DNA of 64,000 nucleotides from Antechinus flavipes (Eukaryota): positions 110,980,001 to 111,044,000 of the forward strand of contig NC_067401.1 in NCBI RefSeq assembly GCF_016432865.1, written 5' to 3'. Made by a program: the position numbers and the translations under genes. Positions 1,079-46,940 of the stretch are shown in pieces. The notes below the pieces were generated by a model that saw nothing but the letters and a program-made list of their open reading frames with translations, searched no databases and was not told the origin of the DNA. The first letter of the stretch is position 1, and every line of letters starts with the position of its first letter.

Positions 1079-4000
1079 ATGACCCCGGGCATCCAACCCA
1101 CCCTGGTCCTTGTACTGTTCCTGTTACCTACAGGTGAGGGCAGAGGAAAAACTGACGGGGAAGGGGTGGCTTGGCTCAGACGGTTTTTGTTTTTGTTTTT
1201 TGCCCCTGGGCTAGAGTTTTGGTTCTTTTTTACCTCTGCAGAGGGAACTAAAGAAAGAGGGAATCCTGGTGTAAGGGTGATCTGGGGGTCTCTAAGTTGG
1301 GACAAAAGCACAGGAGGGAGAAGAAAGGGTCACAGAGACCTAAGACTGAGAAGGGGCCTTACTGGAAAGACTTGGCAGTGGGCAGTGAGGAATCTTGGTT
1401 GATTTACCTAGAATATTTTTTTGGGGAGCAGACAGATATGGAAGTTGGAGAGGGGGAACAGAGCAATAATGGAAGAAAATAGAAGCAGAAACCCAGAGAG
1501 GGAAGTTATGGGCTAGCAATGGAGTCAAGGAAGGTGAAGTAATATCTGGTGTCTTTGGGTTTCTCCATTCACACCCATCCCCTTCCTAAAATTTCTTCCT
1601 TGTGCTTTCTGCCTAAATCTCTCTGGGTCTGTTGTTTCTCCCTGATTTGTTTGGACTCCAGCTTAACCTAGTGTTTCTAACTTCTTATAGCTGTCCTCCA
1701 CAACACCACTGGCACAGCAATTACAACTACAGCTGCAGACAGAACCAGTAGCAACAGAAATACAGAGAATGACAGTACAACAGCAGTGACCTCACATGCT
1801 ATAGCTTCATCTAGCACACACAAACCCACATCTGATCACCACAGCATCACAACTGAACATTCTGACAGTCACAGTTCCAACTCCAGCCACCAGAGCATCA
1901 CAACTACACAACCTGACAGTCACAGCTCCTCCACAACCTCTGGTCACCTTAGCGTCATAACTGAACGTCCTGACAGTCACAGTTCCAACTCCAGCCACCA
2001 GAGCATCACAACTACACAACCTGACAGTCACAGCTCCTCCACAACCTCTGGTCACCTTAGCGTCATAACTGAACGTCCTGACAGTCACAGTTCCAACTCC
2101 AGCCACCAGAGCATCACAACTACACAACCTGGCAGTCACAGCTCCTCCACAACCTCTGGTCATCTTAGCGTCATAACTGAACGTCCTGACAGTCACAGTT
2201 CCAACTCCAGCCACCAGAGCATCACAACTACACAACCTGGCAGTCACAGCTCCTCCACAACCTCTGGTCACCTTAGCGTCATAACTGAACGTCCTGACAG
2301 TCACAGTTCCAACTCCAGCCACCAGAGCATCACAACTACACAACCTGGCAGTCACAGCTCCTCCACAACCTCTGGTCATCTTAGCGTCATAACTGAACGT
2401 CCTGACAGTCACAGTTCCAACTCCAGTCACCAGAGCATCACAACTACACAACCTGGCAGTCATAGCTCCTCCACAACCTCTGGTCACCTTAGCGTTACAA
2501 CTGAACGTCCTGACAGTCACAGTTCCAATTCCAGCCACCAGAGCATCACAACTACACAACCTGGCAGTCACAGTTCCTCCACAACCTCTGGTCACCTTAG
2601 CGTCACGACTGAACGTCCTGACAGTCACAGTTCCAACTCCAGCCACCAGAGCATCACAACCACACAACCTGGCAGTCACAGCTCCTCCACAACCTCTGGT
2701 CACCTTAGCGTCACAACTGAACATCCTGACAGTCACAGTTCCAACTCCAGCCACCAGAGCATCACAACCACACAACCTGGCAGTCACAGCTCCTCCACAA
2801 CCTCTGGTCACCTTAGCGTCACAACTGAACATCCTGACAGTCACAGTTCCAACTCCAGCCACCAGAGCATCACAACTACACAATCTGACAGACACAGCTC
2901 CTCCACAACCTCTGGTCACCTTAGCGTCACAACTGAACATCCTGACAGTCACAGTTCCAACTCCAGCCACCAGAGCATCACAACTACACAACCTGACAGT
3001 CACAGCTCCTCCACAACCTCCATATACTATAGTCCCACATCAGTAGCCCCTGACCATCACATTTCCCCTATAATCCCTGGTCACCATAGCAACACATCTG
3101 CACCTCCTGACCATCACACCTCAACCACAACCCTTGGTCACCATAGCAACACATCTGCACCCCCTAACTATCACACCTCCAGTACACCCACTAATCATCA
3201 TGTCACCATAGCTACAAAAAGCACCAAAATCATTACAGCAACAACTGGTAATCAGAAGAGTATTTCTTCAACCCTTTACCAGAAAGTCACATCTGCCCCT
3301 GACAATAATCACAGCTCCATATCACAACCCAGTACGATCAGCCAAAGTACCCCTTACCTCCCAGTTGACATTAATGAGAGTGTCATGTTTTTCCTCTCAT
3401 TCGTCATCACCAATCTGCACTTTAATTCTTCTCTGGAAAATCCCAGCTCCTTCTACTACCGAGAATTGAAGAATTCTATCAGTGGTCTGGTAGGTACCAT
3501 CCTCTCCCCTATGGGTTGGGAAATCAGACTGTTTTCCTCACCTCCAAATAGCCATTTAATCCTCTGACATCCTGGCTATCCTTCTTCCTTCTTCTCTTTT
3601 CCTAGTTGCAGCAGATCTACAAAGACAAGGCATTTGTGACTTTTTCCCTGCTCCAATTCAGGTACCAGTCTACAGATGTGGGTGGTGTTGAGGGTGGGTA
3701 GGATACCAGCTTAGATATGGGAAAGAGTACCAGTTCCAGAAGGAGGGGGAAGTATTCTGAACCAGGAGCTGGAACCTATAGGACTTAGGTGCAAATCTCC
3801 CTGTGCCCAGAAAGGGCTCTGTGATTACAGAATGTGCTGTGGTCTTCCAAGAGGGCAGCATCACAACCAGTCAAGTACAGAAACTGTTTGCTGAAAATGT
3901 GAAGAAAGGTTACCTCTACAACCTGACTATTTCACCATCAGATATAATTGGTAAGTTGAGTGTCCTTCCTACTGCCTCCCCCTGCCCCATATCTGCCAGA

Positions 4001-5828
4001 GTCATTACTCAGGCACTCTCTGAGAACTTGGAGTCTTCCCCCAAATAGTCTGCTCCCAAGCCAGGAATCCATATTTCCAGGTTTGGTTATTGCCCCATAC
4101 TTTTGGGTCTCCTTTGACCTAAGTACACAGTCTCCCAGAACACCTTTCCCTTCCGTGGGAGGGGAGCAGGGGTCTTAAAGAAGATGGGGACACAGAACCC
4201 TGGGAGAGTTCTTTACACTTCAACTCTTCCATCTAGTCCGTGAGTGGAATTCTGAAGCCTCATCTACTGGCTCTGCTGTGCCTGGCTATGCCATTGCTTT
4301 GCTTGTGATAGTCTGTATCCTGCTCGCTTTGGCGATTTTCCACTTTGCTGTCCTGGTAAGTGCTTTGTCCAGCCCAGATATTTGGGTCCTCCCCCATCTT
4401 GGCTCCCTAGCCATTACTCACTGTGCCCCTTTGCCTTTATCTCCACCACTCTAGGGGATATCTTACTTCCGCCGGAAACATTATGGACAGCTGGATATCT
4501 TCCCATCCCAAGATTCTTATCATCCCATGAACGAGTACCCCCCTTATCATACCCATGGGCGATATGTGCCCCCAGGCAGCACCAAGCGCACTCCCTACGA
4601 AGAGGTGAATTTATACTCAGTGGGCACTGGGAAGGCAAGTGTGATTGGCGTCAAGGGACTCGGGATATATTCAGTGCGCAATGGGCACCGAGAAGTGGGC
4701 TTGACAGAGCATAGACCTCACAGTGTAGTGAGAGAATCTGAAGGATTTCAAACAGACACCAACGAGGAGTGGGCATTGGAGAACACAGGAGCGTAGTCTC
4801 TGCTGGATGGAGAGGGCCAGCACTGGGGGGGAGGATTGAAAAGGGGCCGAGGGCCTGGAAGTGGATGGTCCAGGAAGTCAGGGCGAAGGGAGTTCAGGGA
4901 GCCAGTGACCACCTCCCTTCCTCTTCATTCCCTCGGGAGGGTGCCAGGGACACTGGGTGCCCATGGTGCCTGCACCAAGCACTTCATGGCTCAGCAGACT
5001 TGGCTCCTATCTAGGCAACTGCCCGGGTGCCCAGAGGGCAGAATGGGTGGTTTCTGCTGCCTGGGGGGGGGAGGGGGTACTAGTCCCTGAAGGGCTACAA
5101 GGATGGTACTGTGAGTGGTGAATTTGTAAATGCTTAGGGAGAGGGGCAAACATTTTGGTTTTATATTTATTTTTAGTTTTTGGTTTGTTTTTGGTGGGAA
5201 GACAGGAAAACCCAATCGGGATTAGATGAAAGGGGGGTAGGGGTGGCGGCAATTCCCAGAAGGCCCAGAGGCAGCTTTTTCTATTTTCCCCACATACTCC
5301 CCTTTCCTCTCCCTCCCTCCATCAGGCTCAGGCCACTTGGTAAATAATTACCATTCTCCACCTTGGGCTAAAACTTAGGGTGGGGGAAGGGAGACTCTTC
5401 CCTACTCTCTCCGAGTTCTGTTGCCCACTCCTCGGCCTTTCAGCTCTTTGTCTGGTCCCGCTCTTGGGGGAGGAGGGAATTAAAGGAGCTTGAGATAAGA
5501 GGGTGGGGGTGGGAAGACTAAGGCTAAGAGCCGAGCAGAGGGAAGAGGGAGAGAAAGACGTTGTTTACAGTCGCATGGGACTGTTGGTGGGGCCCCGGGC
5601 AGGTGCTCTGTCTGTGTTAACCCTGTAGGGGAGTGTGTAGGGGACCCTGCTGCCCTTCTCCACCAAGGGGAATACTGGGGGCACCATGCCCTTCCCTAGT
5701 ACCTCTTCCCCGTACCCCTTAAAAATGTAACATACACATGTTCCTTCCTCCCCACTCAGATCTCTCCTGGAAATGGTGGCAACAGCCTCTCTTACGTGAA
5801 TCCAGTGGCCACTTCTGCTAACCTATGA
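1079..5828 (+). CDS. MUC1: Mucin-1 (transmembrane mucin; SEA domain), 795 aa, 7 coding exons
   Basis: join(1079-1133,1691-3489,3606-3661,3811-3950,4237-4355,4455-4604,5760-5828), 2388 nt, all GT-AG and in frame. Signal peptide [16 protein letters not shown]; Ser/Thr repeat; SEA domain with FRKG/SVIT autocleavage site; [26 protein letters not shown]; tail [12 protein letters not shown]...[26 protein letters not shown]. Confidence 0.96.
1861..3020 (+). repeat. MUC1 coding VNTR, 108-bp (36-aa) unit, about 10.7 copies
   Basis: Units start at 1861, 1969, 2077 ... 2941. Consensus [17 protein letters not shown] + P(D/G)[13 protein letters not shown](I/T)TE(R/H). Confidence 0.97.
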
Positions 5829-6078
5829 AGGAATCGTGCCAGCCTTGTGCCTAGGGCCAAGCATTGCCGGGAGCACTTCCCCTCCTCTCCCTGGAAGGGA
5901 AAGTGAGAAGTGCCCTGAGGGCCCCTTCCTGGAAGGCGCATTAGACCCCCCTCCCCCATCTCCATAATCCATCTCCAGATGTCAGAGATTGCCTGCTGCT
6001 ATCCCACCCTCACGCCTGCTCCTGAGGGGAAGGAGCCCGGGTGGGTAGGGATGGGGGAAGAGGAATTGTATGTGGTTG

Positions 6079-8941: not shown

Positions 8942-11900
8942 TCAATCCAGCTTGGAGAAGCCCCCGATTGTGACTTTCCTCTCAGGCTTGATACCCACCG
9001 GCTCTTGCAGCTGGACCGCACCACCCCCGATAAAGCAGAAGGCCGGACATACAGGCCCCGAGCAGTCCAGCGGGCACTCCAGCAGCCCGCGGAAAGACAC
9101 AGCATCGAGGAAGGAGACCCGACCCCGCTCATAGTCCAGGCAGATGCCCAGGCGGGGGGGCAGAGGGACGGTGCAGCCAGCCCCAGGCCCGTCTCGGCCC
9201 GTCAGCCCCGCCCCGCCACTGCCGCCGGCTCCCAGAAGGATCTTGCCCATGCCGATGGTCAGGAAGGCGAAAGGGGGAGATGCTTCCACGGTAGCGTCTT
9301 CTGCTCCACTGTCATGGCCACTGTCTGGGTCGTACCTGGGGAGGGTCCAAAGCGAAGGGCTGATGATGGATGACGGGATCAGGGACCGACCATCCTCTTC
9401 TCCTCCCTGCCATTGTCTCCTCCTATGTTCCCTTCCTAAATCCCTCCCCGCAAAGGATCATTATATGTATATAATATATATTATAACTGGGGCCTTAGAA
9501 AGAATCCAGCTCAAGCCCCTCCTTTTATAGTTAAGAAAGTTCCCCCAAATTCTCTGAGTAGGGGAGCCGAGCTCGCCTGAGCCCCGGGCCCCTTCCCTTT
9601 AGTCCTTAGCCTGCTGCCACAGCCTCTCCCGCCCCCAAGGCCTGGGTTTCCACATGCCCATGGGGCCAAATTGCTCCGTCCCCTTGTCTGCCCCCCCCAG
9701 CCCTCCTGGGCCCCGGTGCGCTCCCCCCCCCAGTCCCGCTCTAAGGCCTGACCTGGGGCTGACCACGTCTGGGGCACCCTGGAAATTCTCCTGCAGTTTG
9801 CTCTCTAGCCCAACACCCACTTTGACCAGGTAGGAGGCTGGATCCACTGCACAGGCCCAGTAGCTGCGGCCCTGGGTCACGGCCACGTCACCCAGCACGA
9901 TGTCCACGCTCAGATGGCAGCCCGTCAGCAGTCGCTCGGCTGCCAGGAGCAGAGGCACTCCCGGTATGCTGCGAACTGCCCGTTGGTCCTTGCTGATGGC
10001 CAGCCGCTCTCTGCTAGAGCCCCAGCGCCCGTCCAGGAAGAAGTGCAGCACTGGGGGAGAGTGGGCAAGATCGGAAGAACAGGAGGATGGGGAAAGCAGG
10101 AGCAAAGCATGGGGAGGGGACTCGGGGAATTGTCAGTGCCCAGGGAGGTCGGGGTTTCAGCAAGACGTCAGTCCAAATTCAAAGGGAGCAGGAGGAAGGG
10201 GAGCATCCTCTGGGAGAATGTCCCCCGGCTGTCTCCTCATTTCAAGCCAGACTGATGGGAGGGGAGGAGGGAAGGGACCATAATGGAGGGGCAGGCCTGG
10301 GCACAATGCCTGAGCCGGATGGTTTGGGTGCGATGCTCAAGCGGGGTAGAAAGAGAGAGGAAACCTGGAGATTTAATTCCTAGGACAGACAGTGGGACAT
10401 GAGGGGAAATAGGAATGGGGAGTGAGTATGAAGATAGAAGGCAAAGGATGGGTGTGGGACCCCAGGAAGAATGTTTATGCAAGAGTACAAGTCATTCCCC
10501 CACCCTGAGCCCCAGACCCCAACCACTCCTCTGCTGTCTCTAGTAACGGGTACTCTCCTGAGCCCAATAGGTGGGACCCTCTGCCTCTATCCCATCGCAC
10601 ATATTTTCCCATGGCTAAGAGTCCCTGTGTCCATCCCTTAGTTTCTCTTTCATTTTCACCTCCATCTCTTTTCTTTGTGACAACAAACCGGACAAGCTCA
10701 CTTCCTAGTGCTTTAGATTTAAATCATCAGATATTTACAAAGTCCTTTTACGACCCTTATCTTGTTTAAATCTTATAATAACATGACAGAATAGATTAGA
10801 TGCCTTATGGTAACATGGGAATTTATTGAGATTTTGATAGTCATGTGGGGTGAGGTGACTGGATCTCTCATTTCAATGATATATAAGAACTCCTACTAAT
10901 CCAGATTATCGACTGTTTGACCCATATAGTTTGAGAATTTTTGGGGGCACTGAGTGGTGAATTACCCAGCATCACATGGCCAGCAGACTTTAGGGGTGAA
11001 AATGGATCACATGGCCAAGTAGGCTTTAGAAGTGAAACTGGGATCAAGCTCTTCCCAAGTCACAGGCCAGCTCTCTCTCCACTTTGCCCTCACTGCTATT
11101 GTCCCCAATTTGCAGATGGGAAAACTAAGATTTAAATAGTTTCAGTGAGTTGCCCATGGGTCATTGATTGAAAAAACAGATTTAGAGTAGCGATTTATCG
11201 CTTCTTATAAAAAGTCTCACATTTACAGAATGCTTTAAGGTTTGCAAAACACTTTCCCCAGAACTCCATGAGACTGGCAGGATAGAGCATGAACAAATAA
11301 GGAAAACCTGGGGCACAGAGAGGCTAAGTGATTTGCCCAAGATTACACAGCTAGTGTCAGAGGATTAAAAATCTAGATTTCTGCTGTCTCCAAGTCCAAA
11401 GCTCTTCCCACAGGACCAAGCTATCTCTCATATACCCTAAATCCCTAAGTATTTGTTCTCTTAGCATCCATACCTGTCCCAGTCCCCAGCCCTGGCCCAG
11501 CAGCTTACCTGGTGCAGGAGGGGTGTGCAAATGGACATCCTCACTGTACTCTCCATAGCCCGCCTTATTGCAGCCTCTGACCCGAAGCACGTAGACTGAG
11601 CCTGGGTCTGGGTTCTCCAGCAGAGCACTGGTCCCTCTCACCTCTTCTCGCCGCTGCCAGCGGGTAGGGCCTGAGGGATTAGGGACATCTGTGCGCCGGA
11701 ACTCCACAGTGTAGTGCCAAGCAGGAGGGGAGTGTGGGGGCAGCCGCCAGCAGAGGAAAATCTGGTCATAGGCAAAGGTGCGCTGGGTATCGATGACAGG
11801 AGCCTCAGGTACTGCAAGAAGAAAGAGCAGGTCAGGACATATGAGGGCCAGCGATGGGATGGGGGAAAGGGGAAAGGAGAGGGCGGGCAGCGGGAGCCCG

Positions 11901-14900
11901 GAGGGTGAGTGGAAGTGAGGGGTGGGGGATTCCTGAGGAAGGAAGCTGGGAAATGGAGACACTGGCACCCAGGCTGGGACAAGCAGGGAGCAGGCATCTA
12001 GGCGATAGGAAAAGAGAGGTATACAAAATCTAGGGAGGAAGAGGAAGAAGACAGGGAGAAATAGACAAGTGGAAAGTAAAGGATGATAGAGGAAGCACAG
12101 TATTGCAGGGAGAACACTAACTAGCCTGGGAATCGGAGGCAGGATGGACACTCTTCCTAGCTTTGCTGCTACTTAGCAGGATAATTTGAGCAAGTCACTT
12201 GGATCTTAAGGGGCTTCGGATTCCTCATCAGTAAAATGGGGGGGGGGGTCCTGGGCCTATAACTGACCTCTAAGGTCCCCTTTAACCCTAAGTGATGAGT
12301 GGGGACAAGGAAAGAAGACAAGAAAGGAGAGAGAAGGGAAAAGCTCCCTAGTACACAAATCAATAAAAGAATAAGGAGAGGAAGCAAAGAGATGGTGGAA
12401 GGGAGAGAGCAGGGAACAAAAGCGAAAAAAGGAAAGTGAAAATCAGATGGAAGACAAAGGTGAGGTAAGTGAAAGGGGAAAGGCCAGGAGAAAGGAAGCA
12501 GAATTGCTGGCGGAGGAATCAATGGTCACAAGTCAAGAGGGACCATCGAAAGGCCCCATGGTAGGAAAATCAGAGAGGTGGCGAAATGAGGAGAGCTCTG
12601 GGGGTGGGGGAGCAGGGCAGAGTAGGACAGAGGGCCCAGCGGGAGGGCAGGGCCCCCGGGGCAGGGGCCAGTGACTTGCCTGGGGTGCTCCGGAGCAGAC
12701 TCCGCCGTGGCCACAGCCTATAAACAAAGAGAGGGAGAAGCAGCGCTGAGCGGAGCTCAATGGAGCCAGGGTCGGGGGCTGAGCAGGGGCTGGGCGCTGG
12801 GGAGGCTGAGGGCAGGGCAGGGAGGAAGCTCTCTGAAGTGGACACTGCCCCCCGGGCCCGCTGCCAGGAAGAGGGAGGAGAGGTTAGGGGAGGTGGGAGA
12901 GGGGACAGGGTCTGGCCACCTCATTACCTCTTAGGAAGCTGAGCTCAGTCAACAGCTTCATCTCACGCCCCACATCCAGCTGACAGTGGCGAAAGGAGGA
13001 GCTGGTAGCTGGACGGAAGTTCTGAAGAGCCTCGGTTGCGCGGGCGATCCTAGAGAAGGAGGCAGGTGATGGTGGTCAGCAGAGACCTCACACCTCTTGC
13101 ACCCTGGCACCGGACCTGGCTCCCTGGCATCTCATAGATGGCTCTGGCCCTAGCACTGGGTTTCAGAGCCCATCCCACCCCTTAAGCCTCAGTCCTGTTC
13201 TATAATATTTTTCAGAGCATCCAAATAAGCCCTGGAAGCTCAAAGAACCAACTCCACCCTTTCCATTAACACGGGCATCTGCTGTCACTTGTCTGCACAC
13301 GAAGAACTTTAGAGTATTTTTCCTTCCTCCTCCTTTCATGCCCTCCATGTTACTGCCTTGTTCTCAGCCCTGCCCCGCTCTGGAGAAGGGCTTCCTCGCA
13401 CGGTGCCCGGTGAGTACCTGTGGTGTAGTTGCTTGGCAGCCTGTACAAAACAAGGCTGGTCAGTCTCTTTGAGGACCTCCTGAGCATAGCCCACTAGTCC
13501 CGAGCCATCCAGCAGGCTCCGGTGCTCCTGGAGCTGGGCCCCGAGCCGGGCTAGCCGTTCCTGCTGGCATTCATCAATGGCCTGCAGCAGAGTTGCCCGC
13601 TTCTCCTCCAGCACTGCACCCAGCCCCCGCACCAGCTGAGCCACTTCCTCCTTTGCTTGCTGACCACTCACCTGCCCAAGGGAAGAGAAGGGCACAAGGA
13701 ACATGATTTTCCATCTTTCTTCCACTGGGCCCTTCCCCAACTTTTTGGGCATCCAGCATCACTGCTAGTTCCCTAAGTATATGAATTAACACTATCTTCA
13801 CCTCGAGAGGTAAAGGGACAAGATGCACGGCCCCTCGGTGGACCCTTGCTCACTCATGCCAGACACTTCGCCTGTATCATTGCCCATTCCCCTAGGCTTC
13901 CAAAACAAACAACTTGGCAGAAAACATCAATGCTACAGCTATCCAACAGCTATGCCAACTTTCTGGGCACCTGTGCCAACCTTTGGGGGCTGAATATTAA
14001 TTCTTAGGGTATTTATGCTACTTCCCTTTGGGACTTTCCCTAGACTACCTGTCCCTATTTGCATCTTTCTATTCACTAGAATCCACGTCAACCTTGCCAC
14101 ATGCACCAAAGTATCCGACAACTTTTGCTTACTTATCACCTCAGACAATTCCAAGGCACCCTAAAGTTATCTCCTTTCAGAACCATCAGAGCTCTGTGAC
14201 ACTTTAGCCAGCCCTACCCACCCTGCCCTGGCACCACGCCTGCCCCTGTGCCCTCCCTCACCTCTGTGTGCCTCACTGTCTCCTCCAGCTCACAGATCTG
14301 GGTTTGTACAGTGTCCTGATTTCCCAAAATATATGTCAGGCTCTTTGTCAGTTTCTCCTGTGAAGGAAGAGAGAAGCGGGCATTATGCCCGGGCACAGGA
14401 GGAGTTTTTGCCCCCGTGGTGAGAAAGATCAGATCAGTGTGGCACAGAGTGATTGTGTAGTGGGGTGGGGAGAGGCGAAGAGGAGGGGGCTAAAGAATGA
14501 CGACTACTCACCTTCAGAGCCTGGTAGGCACTGAGCACGGGTGTAATCTTGTGCCCGCTGTGGGTTCGCCGAACCCGGCAGAGCTGGCACACTAGCCGCT
14601 GGCATGTCTTGCAGTAGTGAGAGACTTCTTCTTTGTGGTCTGGGCACATCAGACCCTGCAGAGAGAAGGCAACGGTATTAAGAAATCCTTCTTAGTCTCC
14701 CAGATGCCTGTGTTTAGGTGCCATAGGCAGAGGTAGCACTTTTCCTGGGAACAGCTGGACTGTAAGAGCCTTAGGGAGCACTACAGCAAGAGGGGCTTTT
14801 TTTAGGTGCAAGGAGGAATCTAAAATTAAGAGCATCATTTTGGGTAGTAATGGGTGCCCTTCAAATACAGGATGGGATTCTGGGTAGCACTTAGCACCAA

Positions 14901-17847
14901 ACTGCTTATCCAGTTCTTTGTTTGAGTACATCACCGATACTTTATCAGTGGCAAAGATATCAATTGGGTGTGTTTCTGTGCGGGCATACAGGCACACACT
15001 GCGTTTTTATATAAACATCTAATCATTTGCAGATTGCTCGATGATTCTCTGGGTGCCCACATATCCAAGGCCCTTGGTAGCAAGGAAGCACCATACTGCA
15101 GTTGACATAATGCTATACAGAACTTCCCTCTCCTCTAGCTCTTTAGGCATCTGCAGAGGGACCCAGAGGGTTGACTGGCAAGACCTGCTCACCTTCGGGC
15201 GAAAAGTGAGGGTGGGCAAGGTGGGTTCATGCTGGGCCTTCTGAGTGCCCCAGGGGTGGTAGAGCTTGAAGCACTCGTTGCAGAAGGTGGCACGGCACTC
15301 GGTACAGCCCTTGGTGGCCTCCAGAGGTGGGGGTTTACAAAGCTGGCACAAGATGGCACCACCCACACTCACACTCTGACGGTACCGCTCCACAACCCGC
15401 TCTAGAGTCAAGTTACGGAAGAGGCCATTCAGGCCCCGCTCGCCCAGCTCCACATCACCCTGGCATGCTGGGCATGGGAACATCACAATCTGGGGGTGCA
15501 AGGCTCCCCGTTTCCGGCCAGGGTATGTTCCAAAACCTGAAGGAGAGCATGAGGAGGGAGATGGAGAGAGGGGAAAGGGGGTATGTGTTAATTCCAATCC
15601 TCAAACCACAGCTGGTGCCACAGCTGGGACACAAAGAAAATTATCCCCTAAACAGGTGCCTTTTCATCAGCAGAAACCAAAATATCACTAGACAAGGAGA
15701 CAGAGAAGACATTTGTCCCTCACTTCCTTTTCCCCTCATTTCTCAGGCAGACAACCTTTAGCTTTTCTGTACTTCACTCTGACAATTCCTGCTTTATGGT
15801 CGTTTTTGATTATCACCCACCTCCCCACCCAACCTTTCCCACCTGAATTCAGCATCCCCACCTGACTTGAGCAGCCTGTCCAGGCGGTCTGCTTTGGGCA
15901 GAGTTCTACGGCCAAGGCGGGGACTTCGTGTGGAAGGAGTGGAGGCAGGTGAGGTGGGCTCAGAGCTGGGATCCCCAGTGTGGGTCCCATAACCCTGCTG
16001 CCCCAGAACTTCCCTGGCACAGGCCTGGCATACATTGTGGGCACAGGGCAGCACCAGTGGCTGCTTGTACATCTCTTGGCAGACAGGGCACAGCAATTCC
16101 CTCTCCATGTTCTTCATGCTTGTCTGAAGGGATGAAGGAGAAGGGGGAAGAAAGGGAGAAGGGATTTTAAGGGGCCTGGCATTTTTTTCCCTCACCTCAT
16201 TTTAGACCCTTGGATAAAACCGAAGGACTTGATATTTGGATTTTTGTATGAGGTTGGAACGGCTGGGTCAGGATCTCCAGAGAAAAAGGCAGGAAAGGAA
16301 AGAGCCCACTCTTCTCATACAACCACCCACTTCTGCGCTCCCAAGCCCAGTTTCAAGCTAGTAACTGATCTGACCTGCCTTGCACACCCCGAAATACAAC
16401 ACCCCTCTTGCCTCAGTTTCCCTCAGTAAAGGGTCGGCACAGGGAGACCTGTGGGCGGGGCCATGGTTTTCCCCATTCCCATCCCCTCCTCTTTCCTAGC
16501 TCTGCAGCAACCCGGCCGCATTTCTCCGCACCCCCCTCCCCCCTTCCTCACCTGCCCGCCGCCCCCACTCCCCTCTCTCAAGCACGGACGTTTTGCTCAA
16601 GGACACAATCCCTTAGACTGCATGGATCCCAGGCCCAATTCTCTCTAGCGCTCTGCCAGCGGCTGCTCCCTCTCCTGTCCCTGTCCTTTCTAAGGGCTCC
16701 ATTCCCTGTCCTCCTCCTCCTCCCTGACCCTGCAGCGTTTTCAGACCTCCGAACCAATCCGTCTGCTAGCTTCGATCGCCCCTCCGTACGATTCACCTCC
16801 CACCGTCGCCATCCCACTGTATCGCTTTCTGCCCCGCCTCCCATCCTCCAACAGCACAGCATCCCTAGCTGCCCCCCAAGGGAGCTGGGGGTAACGAGGG
16901 CCCCGCCCCCTCCCCCTCCCCACCGGAAGTAGCCTCTCCCATTTTCAGTGGTAGTGGGGGGCCCCCAGCTGTCCCCTCCCTCACGTTCTCCTTCCCAACC
17001 TCACCTTGTTCCCTCTCCTAGCAGCCATCCCGGCCAGGGGCGCAGCTGACACAAAGGAGGGAGGGAAGGAGGTGGGGGGGAGTCGGGTTGGCACCGCCCC
17101 TGGGAGCGCCGGGCACGGGGTTGCCATGACAACCCAGGGCTCGGAGGCGCACGGGGGTGGGGGTGAGAGTAGGGGTGAGGGGCAGCGGGGGTGACATGGG
17201 GTGCGGTCAGGGGAGAGGTGGAAAGCGAGCTTTACACCTCGAGGGGAATCACTTCTATGATCCCCTCATCAGTTCTCCAAGCACACACTCCCCTCCAGAG
17301 TATCCTTGGTCCCCTCTGACATCCCTCCATCCCTCCTGTCAAGCCCCCTTCTCAGTTACCCCAGACCCGAAAACCCCGGGCAGATGCCCTCCGGACCTAT
17401 GCCTTAAGCCGCCGCGTTCCCCCACCTCGACATCTGGCGAGCCTCCCCAGCAGCTGTTCACAGCTTCCCCAAGTCCCATCTCCTAGACGCTTTACTCCAT
17501 TGCAACCCAAAGCCGGTTAGCAGCTTCCCTCTTCACCGCGTGTCCCCTCGTATCTTCTCTTCCCTATCCTTCTTCACACCTGCCCCCAGCTTCGCACCCC
17601 AGTATCTCTCTTACCTTCGGGGCTGCAGCCCGGCATCCGCACCTCCGACAGACCCTCCCCTCCACCTGTTCGGTGGCTGTCGCCAACTCCGGGTCCCTGA
17701 CTCGTCCCCCGGTCCCTCGCCCATGACCACTTCTCCCCAGCTTCCCACCAGTTCCCCACTTTCCCCCCTCCATCCCCAACTCACGCTGATGCGGACCAGC
17801 GCATCCATGATGGAAGTAAAGGTCTGCAAGTCCTCACCCTCAGCCAT
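8942..17847 (-). CDS. TRIM46: Tripartite motif-containing 46 (RING, B-boxes, coiled coil, COS, FN3, SPRY), 759 aa, 10 coding exons
   Basis: complement join(17785-17847,15862-16123,15193-15536,14512-14655,14262-14357,13418-13671,12928-13049,11509-11811,9753-10050,8942-9335), 2280 nt, all GT-AG and in frame. Starts [49 protein letters not shown], ends [12 protein letters not shown]. Confidence 0.97.
11220..11420 (-). mobile_element. MIR-family SINE in TRIM46 intron 8
   Basis: tgctttaaggtttgcaaaacact...gaggctaagtgatttgcccaagattacacagctag, an antisense MIR. Boundaries approximate. Confidence 0.6.
12120..12290 (+). mobile_element. MIR-family SINE in TRIM46 intron 7
   Basis: ctagcctgggaatc...gagcaagtcactt...ttcctcatcagtaaaatggg...ctctaaggtcccc. 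Boundaries approximate. Confidence 0.55.
12680..12717 (-). other. TRIM46: TRIM46 38-nt alternative (poison/NMD) cassette exon with GC-AG donor
   Basis: Acceptor ttctccctctctttgtttatag|GCTGTG; donor CCCCAG|gcaagt. It encodes [13 protein letters not shown] and shifts the next exon into a frame that stops at 11638-11640. Confidence 0.8.
17005..17045 (-). other. TRIM46: TRIM46 candidate alternative 5'/cassette exon (ATG at 17028 gives MAARRGNK in frame with exon 2)
   Basis: Pyrimidine-rich acceptor ...ccctcctttgtgtcag| at 17046; strong Kozak gggATGG; donor AAG|gtgagg at 17004. Confidence 0.55.
17120..17133. promoter_or_regulatory. RFX X-box palindrome in TRIM46 intron 1
   Basis: GTTGCCATGACAAC matches 13 of 14 positions of GTTGCCATGGCAAC. 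Confidence 0.65.
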
Positions 17848-43914: not shown

Positions 43915-44520
43915 CTGATTTCATTGTCTCCCAAAATTAGCTTGCTCCCAGAACCATTTGCCTTCTCCCATCAATCATTCCCATCATTCTCTGTTCTATC
44001 CTACCTTAATGCCTATAAATAATTTTATGTCTTCCCATCTTTGAAGAAAAATTCTTCCTTGATCCTACTGTCTTCTCAAACTATGATACTTTGTCTCTCT
44101 GAGTGGGGAGTATGCATGTGTGTGTAAAGAGGGAATAGACCAGAGATTTGAAAGCTAAAATCAGTAAGTCTTGGCAACAGCTTGGACATGGTGGGATGAG
44201 AGACTGAGGAACCCAGGATGGAATTCCTAGGCCGGAAACCTGAGGGTCCGGGAGGAGAATGTTAACCTCTACCATAATAGAGAAAGGAAGAAGGGAGTGA
44301 TTAGGGGAAAGAATAATTAGTTCTGTTTTGGACCTACCTAGAGTTCTATGGGACATGCAGATATGTCAGACTGGAAATCAGAAGAGAGATAGGAAAGGGA
44401 GACCTGAGAATCCTCAGCATAGAGATGGTAGATAATTAAATCCATAGGGACAATGAGATTACCAAGTGAAGAGGAAAGGGCCCAGGAGAATGCTGAGGAA
44501 CACCTTCAGAGGCCGTAATT
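43915..44520. mobile_element. L2 fragments
   Basis: L2-like cttgatcctactgtc... and ggaggagaatgttaacctctaccataatagagaaagg...ggagaatgctgagg. Boundaries approximate. Confidence 0.45.
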
Positions 44521-44629
44521 TGAAAGAGGATCTGGCAAAGGAGAAGGCAGGTATATATTCCATATGGGTTTGTGCAAGTTACATATGTTTATGTATATGT
44601 GCATATGTGTAGATAGTGCATGTTGTTTT

Positions 44630-44759
44630 NNNNNNNNNNNNNNNNNNNNNNNNNNNNNNNNNNNNNNNNNNNNNNNNNNNNNNNNNNNNNNNNNNNNNNN
44701 NNNNNNNNNNNNNNNNNNNNNNNNNNNNNNNNNNNNNNNNNNNNNNNNNNNNNNNNNNN
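44630..44759. other. Assembly gap (130 N)
   Basis: Run of N directly before the AT-rich satellite. Confidence 1.
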
Positions 44760-46940
44760 GGTTATATATAGTTATATTTATCTATATATGGTTATATATG
44801 TAGTTATATTTATATATGGTTATATATGTAGTTATATTTATCTATATATGGTTATATATATAGTTATATTTATCTATATATGGTTATATATGTAGTTATA
44901 TTTATCTATATATGGTTATATATATAGTTATATTTATCTATATATGGTTATATATATAGTTATATTTATCTATATATGGTTATATATGTAGTTATATTTA
45001 TATATGGTTATATATGTAGTTATATTTATCTATATATGGTTATATATATAGTTATATTTATCTATATATGGTTATATATGTAGTTATATTTATCTATATA
45101 TGGTTATATATGTAGTTATATTTATCTATATATGGTTATATATATAGTTATATTTATCTATATATGGTTATATATGTAGTTATATTTATATATGGTTATA
45201 TATGTAGTTATATTTATCTATATATGGTTATATATGTAGTTATATTTATCTATATATGGTTATATATGTAGTTATATTTATCTATATATGGTTATATATA
45301 TAGTTATATTTATCTATATATGGTTATATATATAGTTATATTTATCTATATATGGTTATATATGTAGTTATATTTATATATGGTTATATATGTAGTTATA
45401 TTTATCTATATATGGTTATATATGTAGTTATATTTATCTATATATGGTTATATATGTAGTTATATTTATATATGGTTATATATGTAGTTATATTTATCTA
45501 TATATGGTTATATATATAGTTATATTTATCTATATATGGTTATATATGTAGTTATATTTATCTATATATGGTTATATATGTAGTTATATTTATCTATATA
45601 TGGTTATATATGTAGTTATATTTATCTATATATGGTTATATATGTAGTTATATTTATCTATATATGGTTATATATGTAGTTATATTTATCTATATATGGT
45701 TATATATGTAGTTATATTTATCTATATATGGTTATATATGTAGTTATATTTATCTATATATGGTTATATATGTAGTTATATTTATCTATATATGGTTATA
45801 TATGTAGTTATATTTATCTATATATGGTTATATATGTAGTTATATTTATCTACATATGGTTATATATATAGTTATATTTATCTATATATGGTTATATATA
45901 TAGTTATATTTATCTATATATGGTTATATATAGTTATATTTATCTATATATGGTTATATATGTAGTTATATTTATATATGGTTATATATGTAGTTATATT
46001 TATCTATATATGGTTATATATATAGTTATATTTATCTATATATGGTTATATATAGTTATATTTATCTATATATGGTTATATATGTAGTTATATTTATATA
46101 TGGTTATATATGTAGTTATATTTATCTATATATGGTTATATATATAGTTATATTTATCTATATATGGTTATATATGTAGTTATATTTATCTATATATGGT
46201 TATATATGTAGTTATATTTATCTATATATGGTTATATATGTAGTTATATTTATCTATATATGGTTATATATGTAGTTATATTTATCTATATATGGTTATA
46301 TATGTAGTTATATTTATCTATATATGGTTATATATATAGTTATATTTATCTACATATGGTTATATATATAGTTATATTTATCTATATATGGTTATATATA
46401 TAGTTATATTTATCTATATATGGTTATATATAGTTATATTTATCTATATATGGTTATATATGTAGTTATATTTATATATGGTTATATATGTAGTTATATT
46501 TATCTATATATGGTTATATATATAGTTATATTTATCTATATATGGTTATATATAGTTATATTTATCTATATATGGTTATATATGTAGTTATATTTATATA
46601 TGGTTATATATGTAGTTATATTTATCTATATATGGTTATATATATAGTTTATTTATCTATATATGGTTATATATGTAGTTATATTTATCTATATATGGTT
46701 ATATATGTAGTTATATTTATCTATATATGGTTATATATGTAGTTATATTTATCTATATATGGTTATATATGTAGTTATATTTATCTATATATGGTTATAT
46801 ATGTAGTTATATTATCTATATATGGTTATATATGTAGTTATATTTATCTATATATGGTTATATATGTAGTTATATTTATCTATATATGGTTATATATAGT
46901 TGTATTTATATGGTTATACATATATATAAGGTTATATATA
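44760..46940. repeat. AT-rich 32-bp satellite/minisatellite, about 65-70 copies
   Basis: Unit GGTTATATATGTAGTTATATTTATCTATATAT with 30-bp and 28-bp deletion variants. Confidence 0.97.

What the first reader, a model, noticed from the sequence alone, without database searches (positions are those of the whole stretch)
4455..4484. MUC1 lacks the juxtamembrane CQC motif
Exon 6 begins [17 protein letters not shown], where human has [20 protein letters not shown] is the established palmitoylation and dimerisation motif needed for MUC1-C nuclear and oncogenic signalling, and is the GO-203 target. The RRK motif and all seven tail tyrosines are retained, and a new Tyr sits where CQC was. Either CQC-dependent signalling is a eutherian innovation or it was lost here. 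If this is a dasyurid, it is relevant to cancer biology in that group.
Basis: partly seen in the sequence, partly recalled or inferred. Interest (0 to 1): 0.7.

Follow-up and report, generated by a model that had tools for sequence, protein, structure and literature searches.

The report
Cysteine-free MUC1 tail in a dasyurid
This marsupial's MUC1 gene is intact but has lost every cysteine next to the membrane, the last step of a gradual marsupial loss of a motif that birds and placental mammals share, so it is a natural test of whether those cysteines are needed for normal MUC1 function.

Summary
Window 1079-5828 (+) holds an intact seven-exon MUC1 orthologue. Exon 6 (4455-4604) begins [13 protein letters not shown], where placental mammals have AVCQCRRK.

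- **Base calls:** an Illumina-derived contig of the same species repeats them.
- **Splicing:** an RNA contig of a related dasyurid uses the same exon 5-6 and 6-7 junctions.

I compared 115 MUC1 tails.

- **Not a eutherian innovation:** birds carry C[S/T]C-RRK and squamates x-x-C-RR. The emu gene sits in the THBS3-MUC1-TRIM46-KRTCAP2 neighbourhood.
- **Not lost only here:**
  - The second Cys is Phe in all six marsupial species with protein sequence.
  - The first Cys survives only in opossum.
  - Five of those six species keep one further Cys at RRKHC, the place of human Tyr8, as do many placentals.
- **Specific to this species:** that last Cys is Tyr (TGT>TAT). A congener about 2% divergent and the devil-like relative still read TGT. 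This is the only one of the 115 tails with no cysteine.
- **"All seven tyrosines retained":** true, but Tyr8 is derived here.

Inferred consequence: no juxtamembrane S-palmitoylation or disulfide dimers. Phosphotyrosine motifs are intact, and aromatic residues sit at the membrane interface.

I found no paper reporting this. Interest is moderate.

The parts
1079..1133 (+). MUC1 exon 1 (start codon and signal peptide, [18 protein letters not shown])
   Evidence: Gene model with GT-AG borders; same N-terminus as marsupial MUC1 P0001-P0004
1691..3489 (+). MUC1 exon 2: mucin domain with a 108-bp (36-aa) repeat, 11 copies at 1831-3020, and the start of the SEA domain
   Evidence: Tandem Repeats Finder; residues 480-599 of its translation are 85% identical to P0001
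3606..3661 (+). MUC1 exon 3 (SEA domain)
   Evidence: Model; aligns to P0001, whose SEA domain PF01390 scores E 1.9e-15
3811..3950 (+). MUC1 exon 4 (SEA domain, with the G|SVI autoproteolysis site as KGSVITE)
   Evidence: Model; RNA contigs of X15 cover 3808-3950
4237..4355 (+). MUC1 exon 5: extracellular stub and transmembrane helix ([22 protein letters not shown])
   Evidence: RNA contig record 19 covers 4236-4354 and joins on to 4454-4604
4356..4454 (+). Intron 5, 99 nt, GT..TAG; the acceptor's TAG is an in-frame stop. Relatives read CAG (4452 T>C)
4455..4604 (+). MUC1 exon 6: juxtamembrane segment and most of the cytoplasmic tail ([17 protein letters not shown]...TPYEE)
   Evidence: the same phase-0 acceptor is used in brushtail possum and emu
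4461..4469 (+). Codons TCT TAC TTC (Ser-Tyr-Phe) at the place of Cys-Gln-Cys
   Evidence: Possum has TCT CAG TTC and emu TGC TCC TGC at the homologous codons
4482..4484 (+). Codon TAT (Tyr8); TGT (Cys) in the congener X8, in relative X15 and in brushtail possum
   Evidence: 4483 A>G in X8 and X15; possum codon TGT
5760..5828 (+). MUC1 exon 7: end of the tail ([22 protein letters not shown]) and the stop codon
   Evidence: RNA joint 4604 to 5760 in X15
11357..15597 (-). Part of the convergent neighbour gene TRIM46 (fn3, COS, TRIM coiled-coil and B-box exons)
   Evidence: Pfam hits on minus-strand ORFs; same arrangement in possum L002 and emu L001

Best explanation
This is the true MUC1 orthologue of a dasyurid marsupial. 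It is intact and otherwise strongly conserved. Its membrane-proximal cysteines have all been replaced, as the end point of a stepwise loss. The inferred ancestral therian tail began C-Q-C-R-R-K-x-C, with three cysteines. The C-x-C-RRK part is older than mammals. The marsupial stem changed the second Cys to Phe (TGC>TTC). The Australian marsupials sampled changed the first Cys to Ser. The dasyurids sampled changed Gln to Tyr. This species' own lineage then changed the last Cys to Tyr (TGT>TAT). The tail therefore offers no thiol for S-palmitoylation or for disulfide or redox-driven dimers. Those are the two chemistries assigned to human CQC. Inferred consequences: MUC1-C here should act through its fully retained phosphotyrosine and serine-rich motifs ([23 protein letters not shown]) and through cysteine-independent dimers. 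The aromatic residues now at the membrane interface (Tyr and Phe, plus Tyr8) plausibly take over part of the anchoring that acyl chains give in other species. Shown: the sequence states, their distribution among species, the splice junction, and orthology. Inferred: the direction of each change, the loss of acylation and disulfide dimers, and the aromatic compensation.
For: The seven-exon model has all GT-AG borders and gives a 795-aa open frame. The base calls are repeated by an Illumina contig of the same species, and the junctions 4355/4455 and 4604/5760 are seen in an RNA contig of a relative. Marsupial tails: opossum CQF..HC; wombat, koala and possum SQF..HC; P0001 SYF..HC; window SYF..HY. 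Across 115 sequences, the second Cys is present in 101 of 105 non-marsupials and 0 of 10 marsupial sequences. The window is the only sequence with no Cys from the junction to the C-terminus. Birds have C[S/T]CRRK and squamates x-x-CRR. The emu gene lies between THBS3-like and TRIM46-like/KRTCAP2 genes. The same phase-0 acceptor sits two codons before the motif in emu, possum and the window. 4483 A>G (Tyr>Cys) is read in a congener about 2% divergent and in the devil-like relative. The tail is 52/72 identical to human with all seven Tyr kept. Every replacement of the second Cys seen anywhere is aromatic: Phe in marsupials, Trp in camelids and one ibis, Tyr in one pelican. The functions of human CQC (palmitoylation and recycling, oligomerisation and nuclear import) come from PMC4202122 and PMC9564314. 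Dimers that form without these cysteines are reported in PMC3161956.
Against: No RNA of the window's own species was laid, and its acceptor reads TAG where relatives read CAG. Run X1 may be the assembly's own sample. Only six marsupial species from three orders have protein sequence. No monotreme, bandicoot, Dromiciops or shrew-opossum was seen, so the timing of each step is coarse. Read laying hid 89 differences, so the S-Y-F codons of organisms E and G were not read directly. Organism G, more divergent and sharing deletions with the devil-like H, reads the window's letter at 4483. That implies a parallel change or a more complicated history. No acylation, dimerisation or localisation experiment exists for any marsupial MUC1. 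The aromatic-anchor idea rests on about four independent events. By my own rough count, three of the seven amino acids one base change away from a Cys codon are aromatic, which gives a chance of about 0.03.
Confidence: 0.75

Rival explanations
1. CQC is a eutherian innovation, and marsupials such as this one simply keep the older, cysteine-poor state.
For: All ten marsupial sequences lack the second Cys. Reviews state that MUC1 first appeared in mammals (PMC9564314, PMC12958477).
Against: Birds carry CSC/CTC directly before RRK, squamates carry the second Cys, and opossum keeps the first. The emu gene is syntenic: THBS3-like, MUC1, TRIM46-like, KRTCAP2. The motif sits at the same distance from the same phase-0 acceptor. 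Parsimony puts C-x-C at the amniote root.
Confidence: 0.03
2. Artefact: an assembly or base-call error, a wrong splice model, or a decaying pseudogene.
For: No transcript of the species itself was examined. X1 might be the assembly's source. A processed MUC1 retrocopy fragment exists elsewhere in the genome.
Against: The X1 contig, at depth about 25, agrees over 4455-4604 yet differs at three other places. S-Y-F is shared with P0001. The RNA junction in the relative falls exactly at 4355/4455. The 795-aa frame is open, all borders are canonical, and the rest of the tail is highly conserved. The locus has the expected TRIM46 neighbour.
Confidence: 0.03
3. Neutral drift with no compensation. The juxtamembrane cysteines are dispensable for MUC1's normal barrier function, so they toggle freely, and the aromatic replacements are merely what single base changes of a Cys codon yield.
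For: Even eutherians vary: WQC in three New World monkeys, YQC in Rhynchocyon, HQC in Pteropus, CHW in camelids. Position 8 toggles between C and Y, 26 against 39 sequences. The AQA mutant still dimerises and signals in one study (PMC3161956).
Against: The second Cys is kept in 101 of 105 non-marsupial sequences spanning the whole of amniote evolution, which is not free drift. Its few replacements are all aromatic. The AQA mutant has a recycling defect in human-protein studies (PMC4202122).
Confidence: 0.2
4. Cysteine-dependent functions persist through another thiol: the conserved transmembrane Cys (residue 710) or a partner protein.
For: A transmembrane Cys (LLVIVC) is conserved in most of the sequences, this one included.
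Against: That Cys lies in the outer half of the helix, 18 residues before RRK and away from the cytosolic face where acylation and redox dimerisation are described. It is Ser or Ala in brushtail possum, passerines and some lizards.
Confidence: 0.05

Closest known systems
Human and mouse MUC1 (MUC1-C subunit with the CQC-RRK juxtamembrane motif)
   Same: Signal peptide. Single large exon with a tandem-repeat mucin domain. SEA domain with a G|SV cleavage motif. One transmembrane helix with a conserved Cys. RRK is kept. The 70-aa tail is 52/72 identical to human, with Tyr at 8, 20, 26, 29, 35, 46 and 60, a serine-rich GNGG-SLSY segment and a C-terminal TSANL. TRIM46 lies convergent downstream.
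   Different: S-Y-F stands in place of C-Q-C, and there is no cysteine anywhere in the tail. The repeat unit is 36 aa (11 copies), not the 20 aa I recall for human. YEEI stands where human has YEKV.
Other marsupial MUC1 (Monodelphis F6V355/P0004, Vombatus XP_027727261, Phascolarctos XP_020847084, Trichosurus P0003, unnamed dasyurid-like P0001)
   Same: Phe at the second Cys position. The same exon junction. A near-identical tail ([45 protein letters not shown]).
   Different: All of them keep Cys at RRKHC, and opossum also keeps the first Cys. The window has Tyr at position 8 and so has no Cys at all.
Engineered human MUC1 CQC>AQA mutant
   Same: It has no juxtamembrane thiols. It is the laboratory analogue of what this species carries naturally.
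   Different: AQA puts small residues at the interface and is reported to lose palmitoylation, recycling, oligomerisation and nuclear import (PMC4202122, PMC9564314). Dimers and ICAM-1 signalling persist in PMC3161956. The natural variant puts aromatic residues there and has evolved together with the rest of the protein.
Bird and squamate mucin-1 (for example Dromaius P0069, Heteronotia P0062)
   Same: SEA domain, transmembrane helix and tail, with SYHPM.EYP.Y..HGRY and F[ST]YTNP. The emu gene has the same gene neighbourhood.
   Different: They keep C-x-C-RRK (birds) or x-x-C-RR (squamates) and have Arg, His or Gln at position 8.

Membership tests
MUC1 orthologue | Signal peptide followed by a Pro/Thr/Ser-rich tandem-repeat domain in one large exon | tested here: met
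   Exon 2 (1691-3489) holds a 108-bp repeat in 11 copies with 96% matches
MUC1 orthologue | SEA domain with a G|SV autoproteolysis motif just outside the membrane | tested here: met
   KGSVITE lies in exon 4. The last 235 aa match P0001 at 201 of 245 aligned positions, and P0001's SEA (PF01390) scores E 1.9e-15. The window's own spliced SEA domain was not scanned directly, because a spliced protein has no reference.
MUC1 orthologue | Single transmembrane helix followed by a tail of about 70 aa with the conserved Tyr motifs and a C-terminal SANL | tested here: met
MUC1 orthologue | Gene neighbourhood THBS3 - MUC1 - TRIM46 (convergent) - KRTCAP2 | tested here: met
   TRIM46-type domains are found on the minus strand downstream. 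The same holds in possum L002, and the full set is seen in emu L001. THBS3 would lie upstream of the window and could not be seen.
CQC-dependent MUC1-C signalling module (palmitoylation, redox dimerisation, GO-203 target) | Two cysteines flanking one residue directly before RRK | tested here: not met
   TCT TAC TTC gives S-Y-F, confirmed in a contig of run X1
CQC-dependent MUC1-C signalling module (palmitoylation, redox dimerisation, GO-203 target) | Any cytosolic cysteine near the membrane that could be acylated or oxidised | tested here: not met
   There is no Cys from the junction to the C-terminus, the only such case among 115 sequences. The protein's only cysteines are at 645 and 710.
CQC-dependent MUC1-C signalling module (palmitoylation, redox dimerisation, GO-203 target) | S-acylation, disulfide dimers and nuclear import of the tail | not testable with these tools
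   This needs cell-based assays

The most novel reading that the evidence does not exclude
Marsupials shed the three ancestral juxtamembrane cysteines of MUC1 one by one, ending in a cysteine-free tail in this antechinus-like species. Each lost thiol at the C-x-C positions was replaced by an aromatic or hydroxyl residue at the membrane interface. If the protein still recycles, dimerises and signals normally, then acylation and redox dimerisation at CQC are not part of MUC1's core physiological function. That motif is treated as the Achilles' heel of human MUC1-C. It would mean an aromatic belt can stand in for a lipid anchor. The same data show that C-x-C-RRK and MUC1 itself predate mammals, contrary to current reviews.
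Probability: 0.3. Interest if true: 0.55.

Novelty: new variant of a known kind. Interest (0 to 1): 0.4.

Why it matters
Human MUC1-C biology and the GO-203 class of inhibitors are built on the CQC motif. Current reviews call MUC1-C highly conserved across mammals and say the gene arose in mammals. Three points here bear on that. The C-x-C-RRK motif is shared with birds. A whole mammalian infraclass lacks its second cysteine. One dasyurid has no tail cysteine at all. Together these give a graded natural series of three, two, one and zero thiols. The series separates cysteine-dependent functions (palmitoylation-driven recycling, redox dimerisation, nuclear import) from the phosphotyrosine signalling that is conserved throughout. 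This is comparative evidence, not a new system. It matters mainly to MUC1 specialists and to anyone using marsupial models of implantation or epithelial barriers. A link to dasyurid cancers is not supported by anything seen here.

Tried and rejected
- **Alternative acceptor or hidden exon supplying cysteines:** rejected. Intron 5 is 99 nt, the in-frame codon before 4455 is TAG, and the relative's RNA uses the same junction.
- **Sequencing error:** rejected by the X1 contig.
- **Eutherian innovation:** rejected by bird and squamate orthologues and emu synteny.
- **Monotreme MUC1:** none appeared in the two word searches, which covered 266-845 aa and 361-1150 aa. This says nothing about shorter or longer proteins.
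- The protein is not open, and the birds already settle the direction of change.
- **Literature:** four full-text searches and six papers read found no statement that marsupial MUC1 lacks CQC or that birds carry C-x-C-RRK. The 2006 chicken mucin inventory could not predict a chicken Muc1 (PMC1552070). A search of Lang et al. 2016 for MUC1 as a whole word found nothing.
- **Species identity of the coded runs:** could not be established. P0001 and P0004 carry only UniParc ids. P0004 is identical to Monodelphis F6V355 over their shared exons.
- **S-Y-F codons of organisms E, G and H:** could not be read from read laying, because 89 differences were not listed and the call is capped at one.

Full report
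**What is there.** The window opens about 1 kb upstream of a seven-exon gene on the + strand. The exons are 1079-1133, 1691-3489, 3606-3661, 3811-3950, 4237-4355, 4455-4604 and 5760-5828. All borders are GT-AG, and the open frame is 795 aa. Exon 2 carries a 108-bp (36-aa) tandem repeat in 11 copies. Exons 2 to 5 encode a SEA domain with the cleavage motif as KGSVITE. Exon 5 encodes the transmembrane helix. Exons 6 and 7 encode a 70-aa tail that ends in TSANL.

ORFs on the minus strand downstream hit fn3, COS, TRIM coiled-coil and B-box models. That is the TRIM46 architecture, convergent with MUC1. A word search with the end of exon 2 returned four marsupial mucin-1 proteins and nothing else. 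The closest, P0001, is 85% identical. Its SEA domain scores E 1.9e-15 against PF01390. This is the MUC1 orthologue.

**The observation.** Positions 4455-4484 read GGG ATA TCT TAC TTC CGC CGG AAA CAT TAT, which is [10 protein letters not shown]. The exon joins in phase 0 to ...FHFAVL. The human isoform from the search reads [20 protein letters not shown] at the same place. The tail is 52/72 identical to human. Tyrosines at 8, 20, 26, 29, 35, 46 and 60 are all present, and a new one stands at position 2.

**Is it an artefact?** I ran one lay of public runs on 3780-5900.
- Run X1 holds 0.95 of the sampled words, so it is the same species. It gives one contig across the whole stretch at depth about 25. 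The contig has three differences, none in exon 6. It is therefore at least another haplotype, although it may come from the assembly's own sample.
- Run X15 has transcriptome-like contigs from a related species. One 267-nt contig joins 4355 to 4455 at GT..AG, and another joins 4604 to 5760.
- No RNA of the window's own species was on offer, and here the acceptor is TAG where two relatives read CAG (4452 T>C). That TAG is also an in-frame stop, so no upstream acceptor could extend the frame.
- Intron 5 is only 99 nt, and exons 6 and 7 hold no Cys codon in frame.
- The protein has just two cysteines, at 645 (SEA) and 710 (transmembrane).

**Comparison.** Two further word searches used the opossum-like P0004 tail and the gecko P0062 tail. 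With one cluster look-up they brought the set to 115 MUC1 sequences, counting the window. I aligned them from the transmembrane helix to the C-terminus.

| Group | First Cys position | Second Cys position | Position 8 (human Tyr8) |
|---|---|---|---|
| Eutherians (68) | C 61; W 3 (Cebus, Aotus, Sapajus); Y 1 (Rhynchocyon); H 1 (Pteropus); F 1; V 1 | C 66; W 2 (camelids) | Y 39; C 26; G 2; D 1 |
| Birds (28) | C 28 | C 26; Y 1; W 1 | R 24; H 2; Q 2 |
| Squamates (9) | Y 7; R 1; H 1 | C 9 | R 9 |
| Marsupial sequences (10) | C 3 (all opossum-type); S 7 | F 10 | C 9; Y 1 (window) |

The typical forms are CQC-RRK in eutherians, C[S/T]C-RRK in birds and [Y/R/H][R/W]C-RR in squamates. The marsupial motifs are:
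- opossum: CQF
- wombat, koala and brushtail possum: SQF
- P0001 and the window: SYF

The window is the only one of the 115 sequences with no cysteine from the junction to the C-terminus.

**Orthology of the outgroups.**
- The emu protein lies between a thrombospondin gene (COMP, TSP_3 and TSP_C domains) and a TRIM46-like gene on the opposite strand. A Keratin_assoc (KRTCAP2) gene follows. This is the neighbourhood I know for human MUC1.
- The brushtail possum locus also has TRIM46 convergent downstream.
- In emu, possum and the window the tail exon starts at the same phase-0 acceptor, two codons before the first motif position. The readings are emu cag|ACC ACC TGC TCC TGC CGC CGG AAG, possum cag|GGG CTA TCT CAG TTC CGC CGG AAA, and window tag|GGG ATA TCT TAC TTC CGC CGG AAA.

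**Direction of change (inference by parsimony on the accepted tree).**
- C-x-C-RRK is ancestral for amniotes, and squamates changed the first position.
- The Cys at position 8 is inferred for the therian ancestor. It is present in marsupials, afrotheres, many laurasiatheres and rabbit. It toggled to Tyr several times, so human Tyr8 is derived.
- In marsupials the second Cys became Phe on the stem (TGC>TTC).
- The first Cys became Ser in the sampled Australian orders.
- Gln became Tyr in the sampled dasyurids.
- On this species' own lineage the last Cys became Tyr (TGT>TAT). At 4483, run X8 (about 2% divergent) and X15 read G, as does possum.
- The number of tail thiols therefore falls from three to two, one and then none.

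One loose end remains. Run X12 is more divergent and shares a 3-nt and a 12-nt deletion with X15, yet it reads the window's A at 4483. This points to a parallel change at a site that also toggles in eutherians. Read laying hid 89 differences, so the neighbouring letters of that run are unknown.

**What it means mechanistically.** In human MUC1 the CQC cysteines are reported to be palmitoylated and needed for recycling to the surface (PMC4202122, citing Kinlough 2006). They are also reported to be needed for oligomerisation, nuclear import and the action of GO-203 (PMC9564314, PMC12958477). Another laboratory found constitutive tail dimers, Src recruitment and ICAM-1 signalling unchanged in the AQA mutant (PMC3161956).

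A tail without cysteine cannot be S-acylated or form disulfides. That much follows from chemistry. The rest is inference. I expect signalling here to run through the retained motifs: YHPM, PYEEI (an optimal Src-SH2 type site by my knowledge), the serine-rich GNGGNSLSY segment and YVNP. I also expect cysteine-independent dimers.

Every replacement of the second Cys seen anywhere is aromatic: Phe, Trp, Trp and Tyr. Most replacements of the first Cys are aromatic too. Only three of the seven amino acids one base change away from a Cys codon are aromatic. This suggests an aromatic side chain at the interface can partly replace an acyl chain. The sample is only about four independent events, so this is a hypothesis.

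**Comparison with what is known.** The sequences of the other marsupials, birds and lizards are public predicted proteins. Four full-text searches and six papers read turned up no statement that marsupial MUC1 lacks CQC or that birds carry C-x-C-RRK. The two recent reviews say MUC1 first appeared in mammals and that MUC1-C is highly conserved across mammals. The 2006 chicken inventory could not predict a Muc1. I file this as a new variant of a known protein. It is a true MUC1 that fails the defining feature of the CQC module.

**Verdict.** The motif is neither a eutherian innovation nor lost only here. What is particular to this species is the loss of the last remaining tail cysteine, which also makes 'Tyr8 retained' a convergence. 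The dasyurid guess fits. Another note of this scan calls the genome yellow-footed antechinus, and the pattern of closely related runs is compatible with a species-rich genus, but I did not test this. The cancer angle is untested. Interest is moderate: a useful natural series for MUC1 specialists, but not a new kind of system.

**Limits.**
- Marsupial sampling is six species with protein sequence.
- No monotreme was seen.
- The costly representative search was left unused.
- The run and species names were coded.

Noticed in passing
window 3889-3950 (seen in runs X1 and X8): DNA contigs of the same species and of a congener carry the end of exon 4 joined directly to exon-5-like letters, with no intron, at about 13-15% divergence. 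Unrelated sequence lies before 3889. This looks like a fragment of a processed MUC1 retrocopy elsewhere in the genome.
   Followed up: no
window 4605-4640: The 30 nt after the exon 6 donor translate to [10 protein letters not shown], exactly the ten extra residues in the dasyurid-like protein P0001. P0001 therefore uses a donor 30 nt further on. Here that site reads GCAAGT, a GC donor. The relative's RNA contig shows only the 4604-to-5760 junction, so the longer form is unsupported.
   Followed up: partly
L001 (emu) 1-23012, and proteins P0061-P0105: Birds and squamates have a syntenic MUC1 orthologue (THBS3-like, MUC1, TRIM46-like, KRTCAP2) with a strongly conserved tail. The reviews read here state that MUC1 first appeared in mammals.
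   Followed up: partly
proteins P0026, P0027, P0030, P0022, P0058, P0057, P0109: CQC is not invariant in placental mammals: WQC in three New World monkeys, YQC in Rhynchocyon, HQC in Pteropus and CHW in alpaca and camel. Human Tyr8 is Cys in 26 of the 68 eutherian sequences.
   Followed up: partly
window 4602-4604 with 5760-5762: The splice joins ...PYEE to I, giving YEEI where human has YEKV and most eutherians have YEEV. All marsupials sampled share it. By my knowledge YEEI is the preferred Src-family SH2 ligand.
   Followed up: no
proteins P0111, P0112: Wombat has 'mucin-1' and 'mucin-1-like' records on the same 88.6-Mb contig with identical tails. This is either a recent duplicate or a duplicated assembly stretch.
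   Followed up: no
window 4452: The exon 6 acceptor is TAG here but CAG in two related species. The change puts an in-frame stop directly before the exon.
   Followed up: partly
window 44630-44759: A run of 130 N (assembly gap or masked stretch). It sits in an AT-rich region with GC of 0.22 over 44001-46000. It was left untouched.
   Followed up: no
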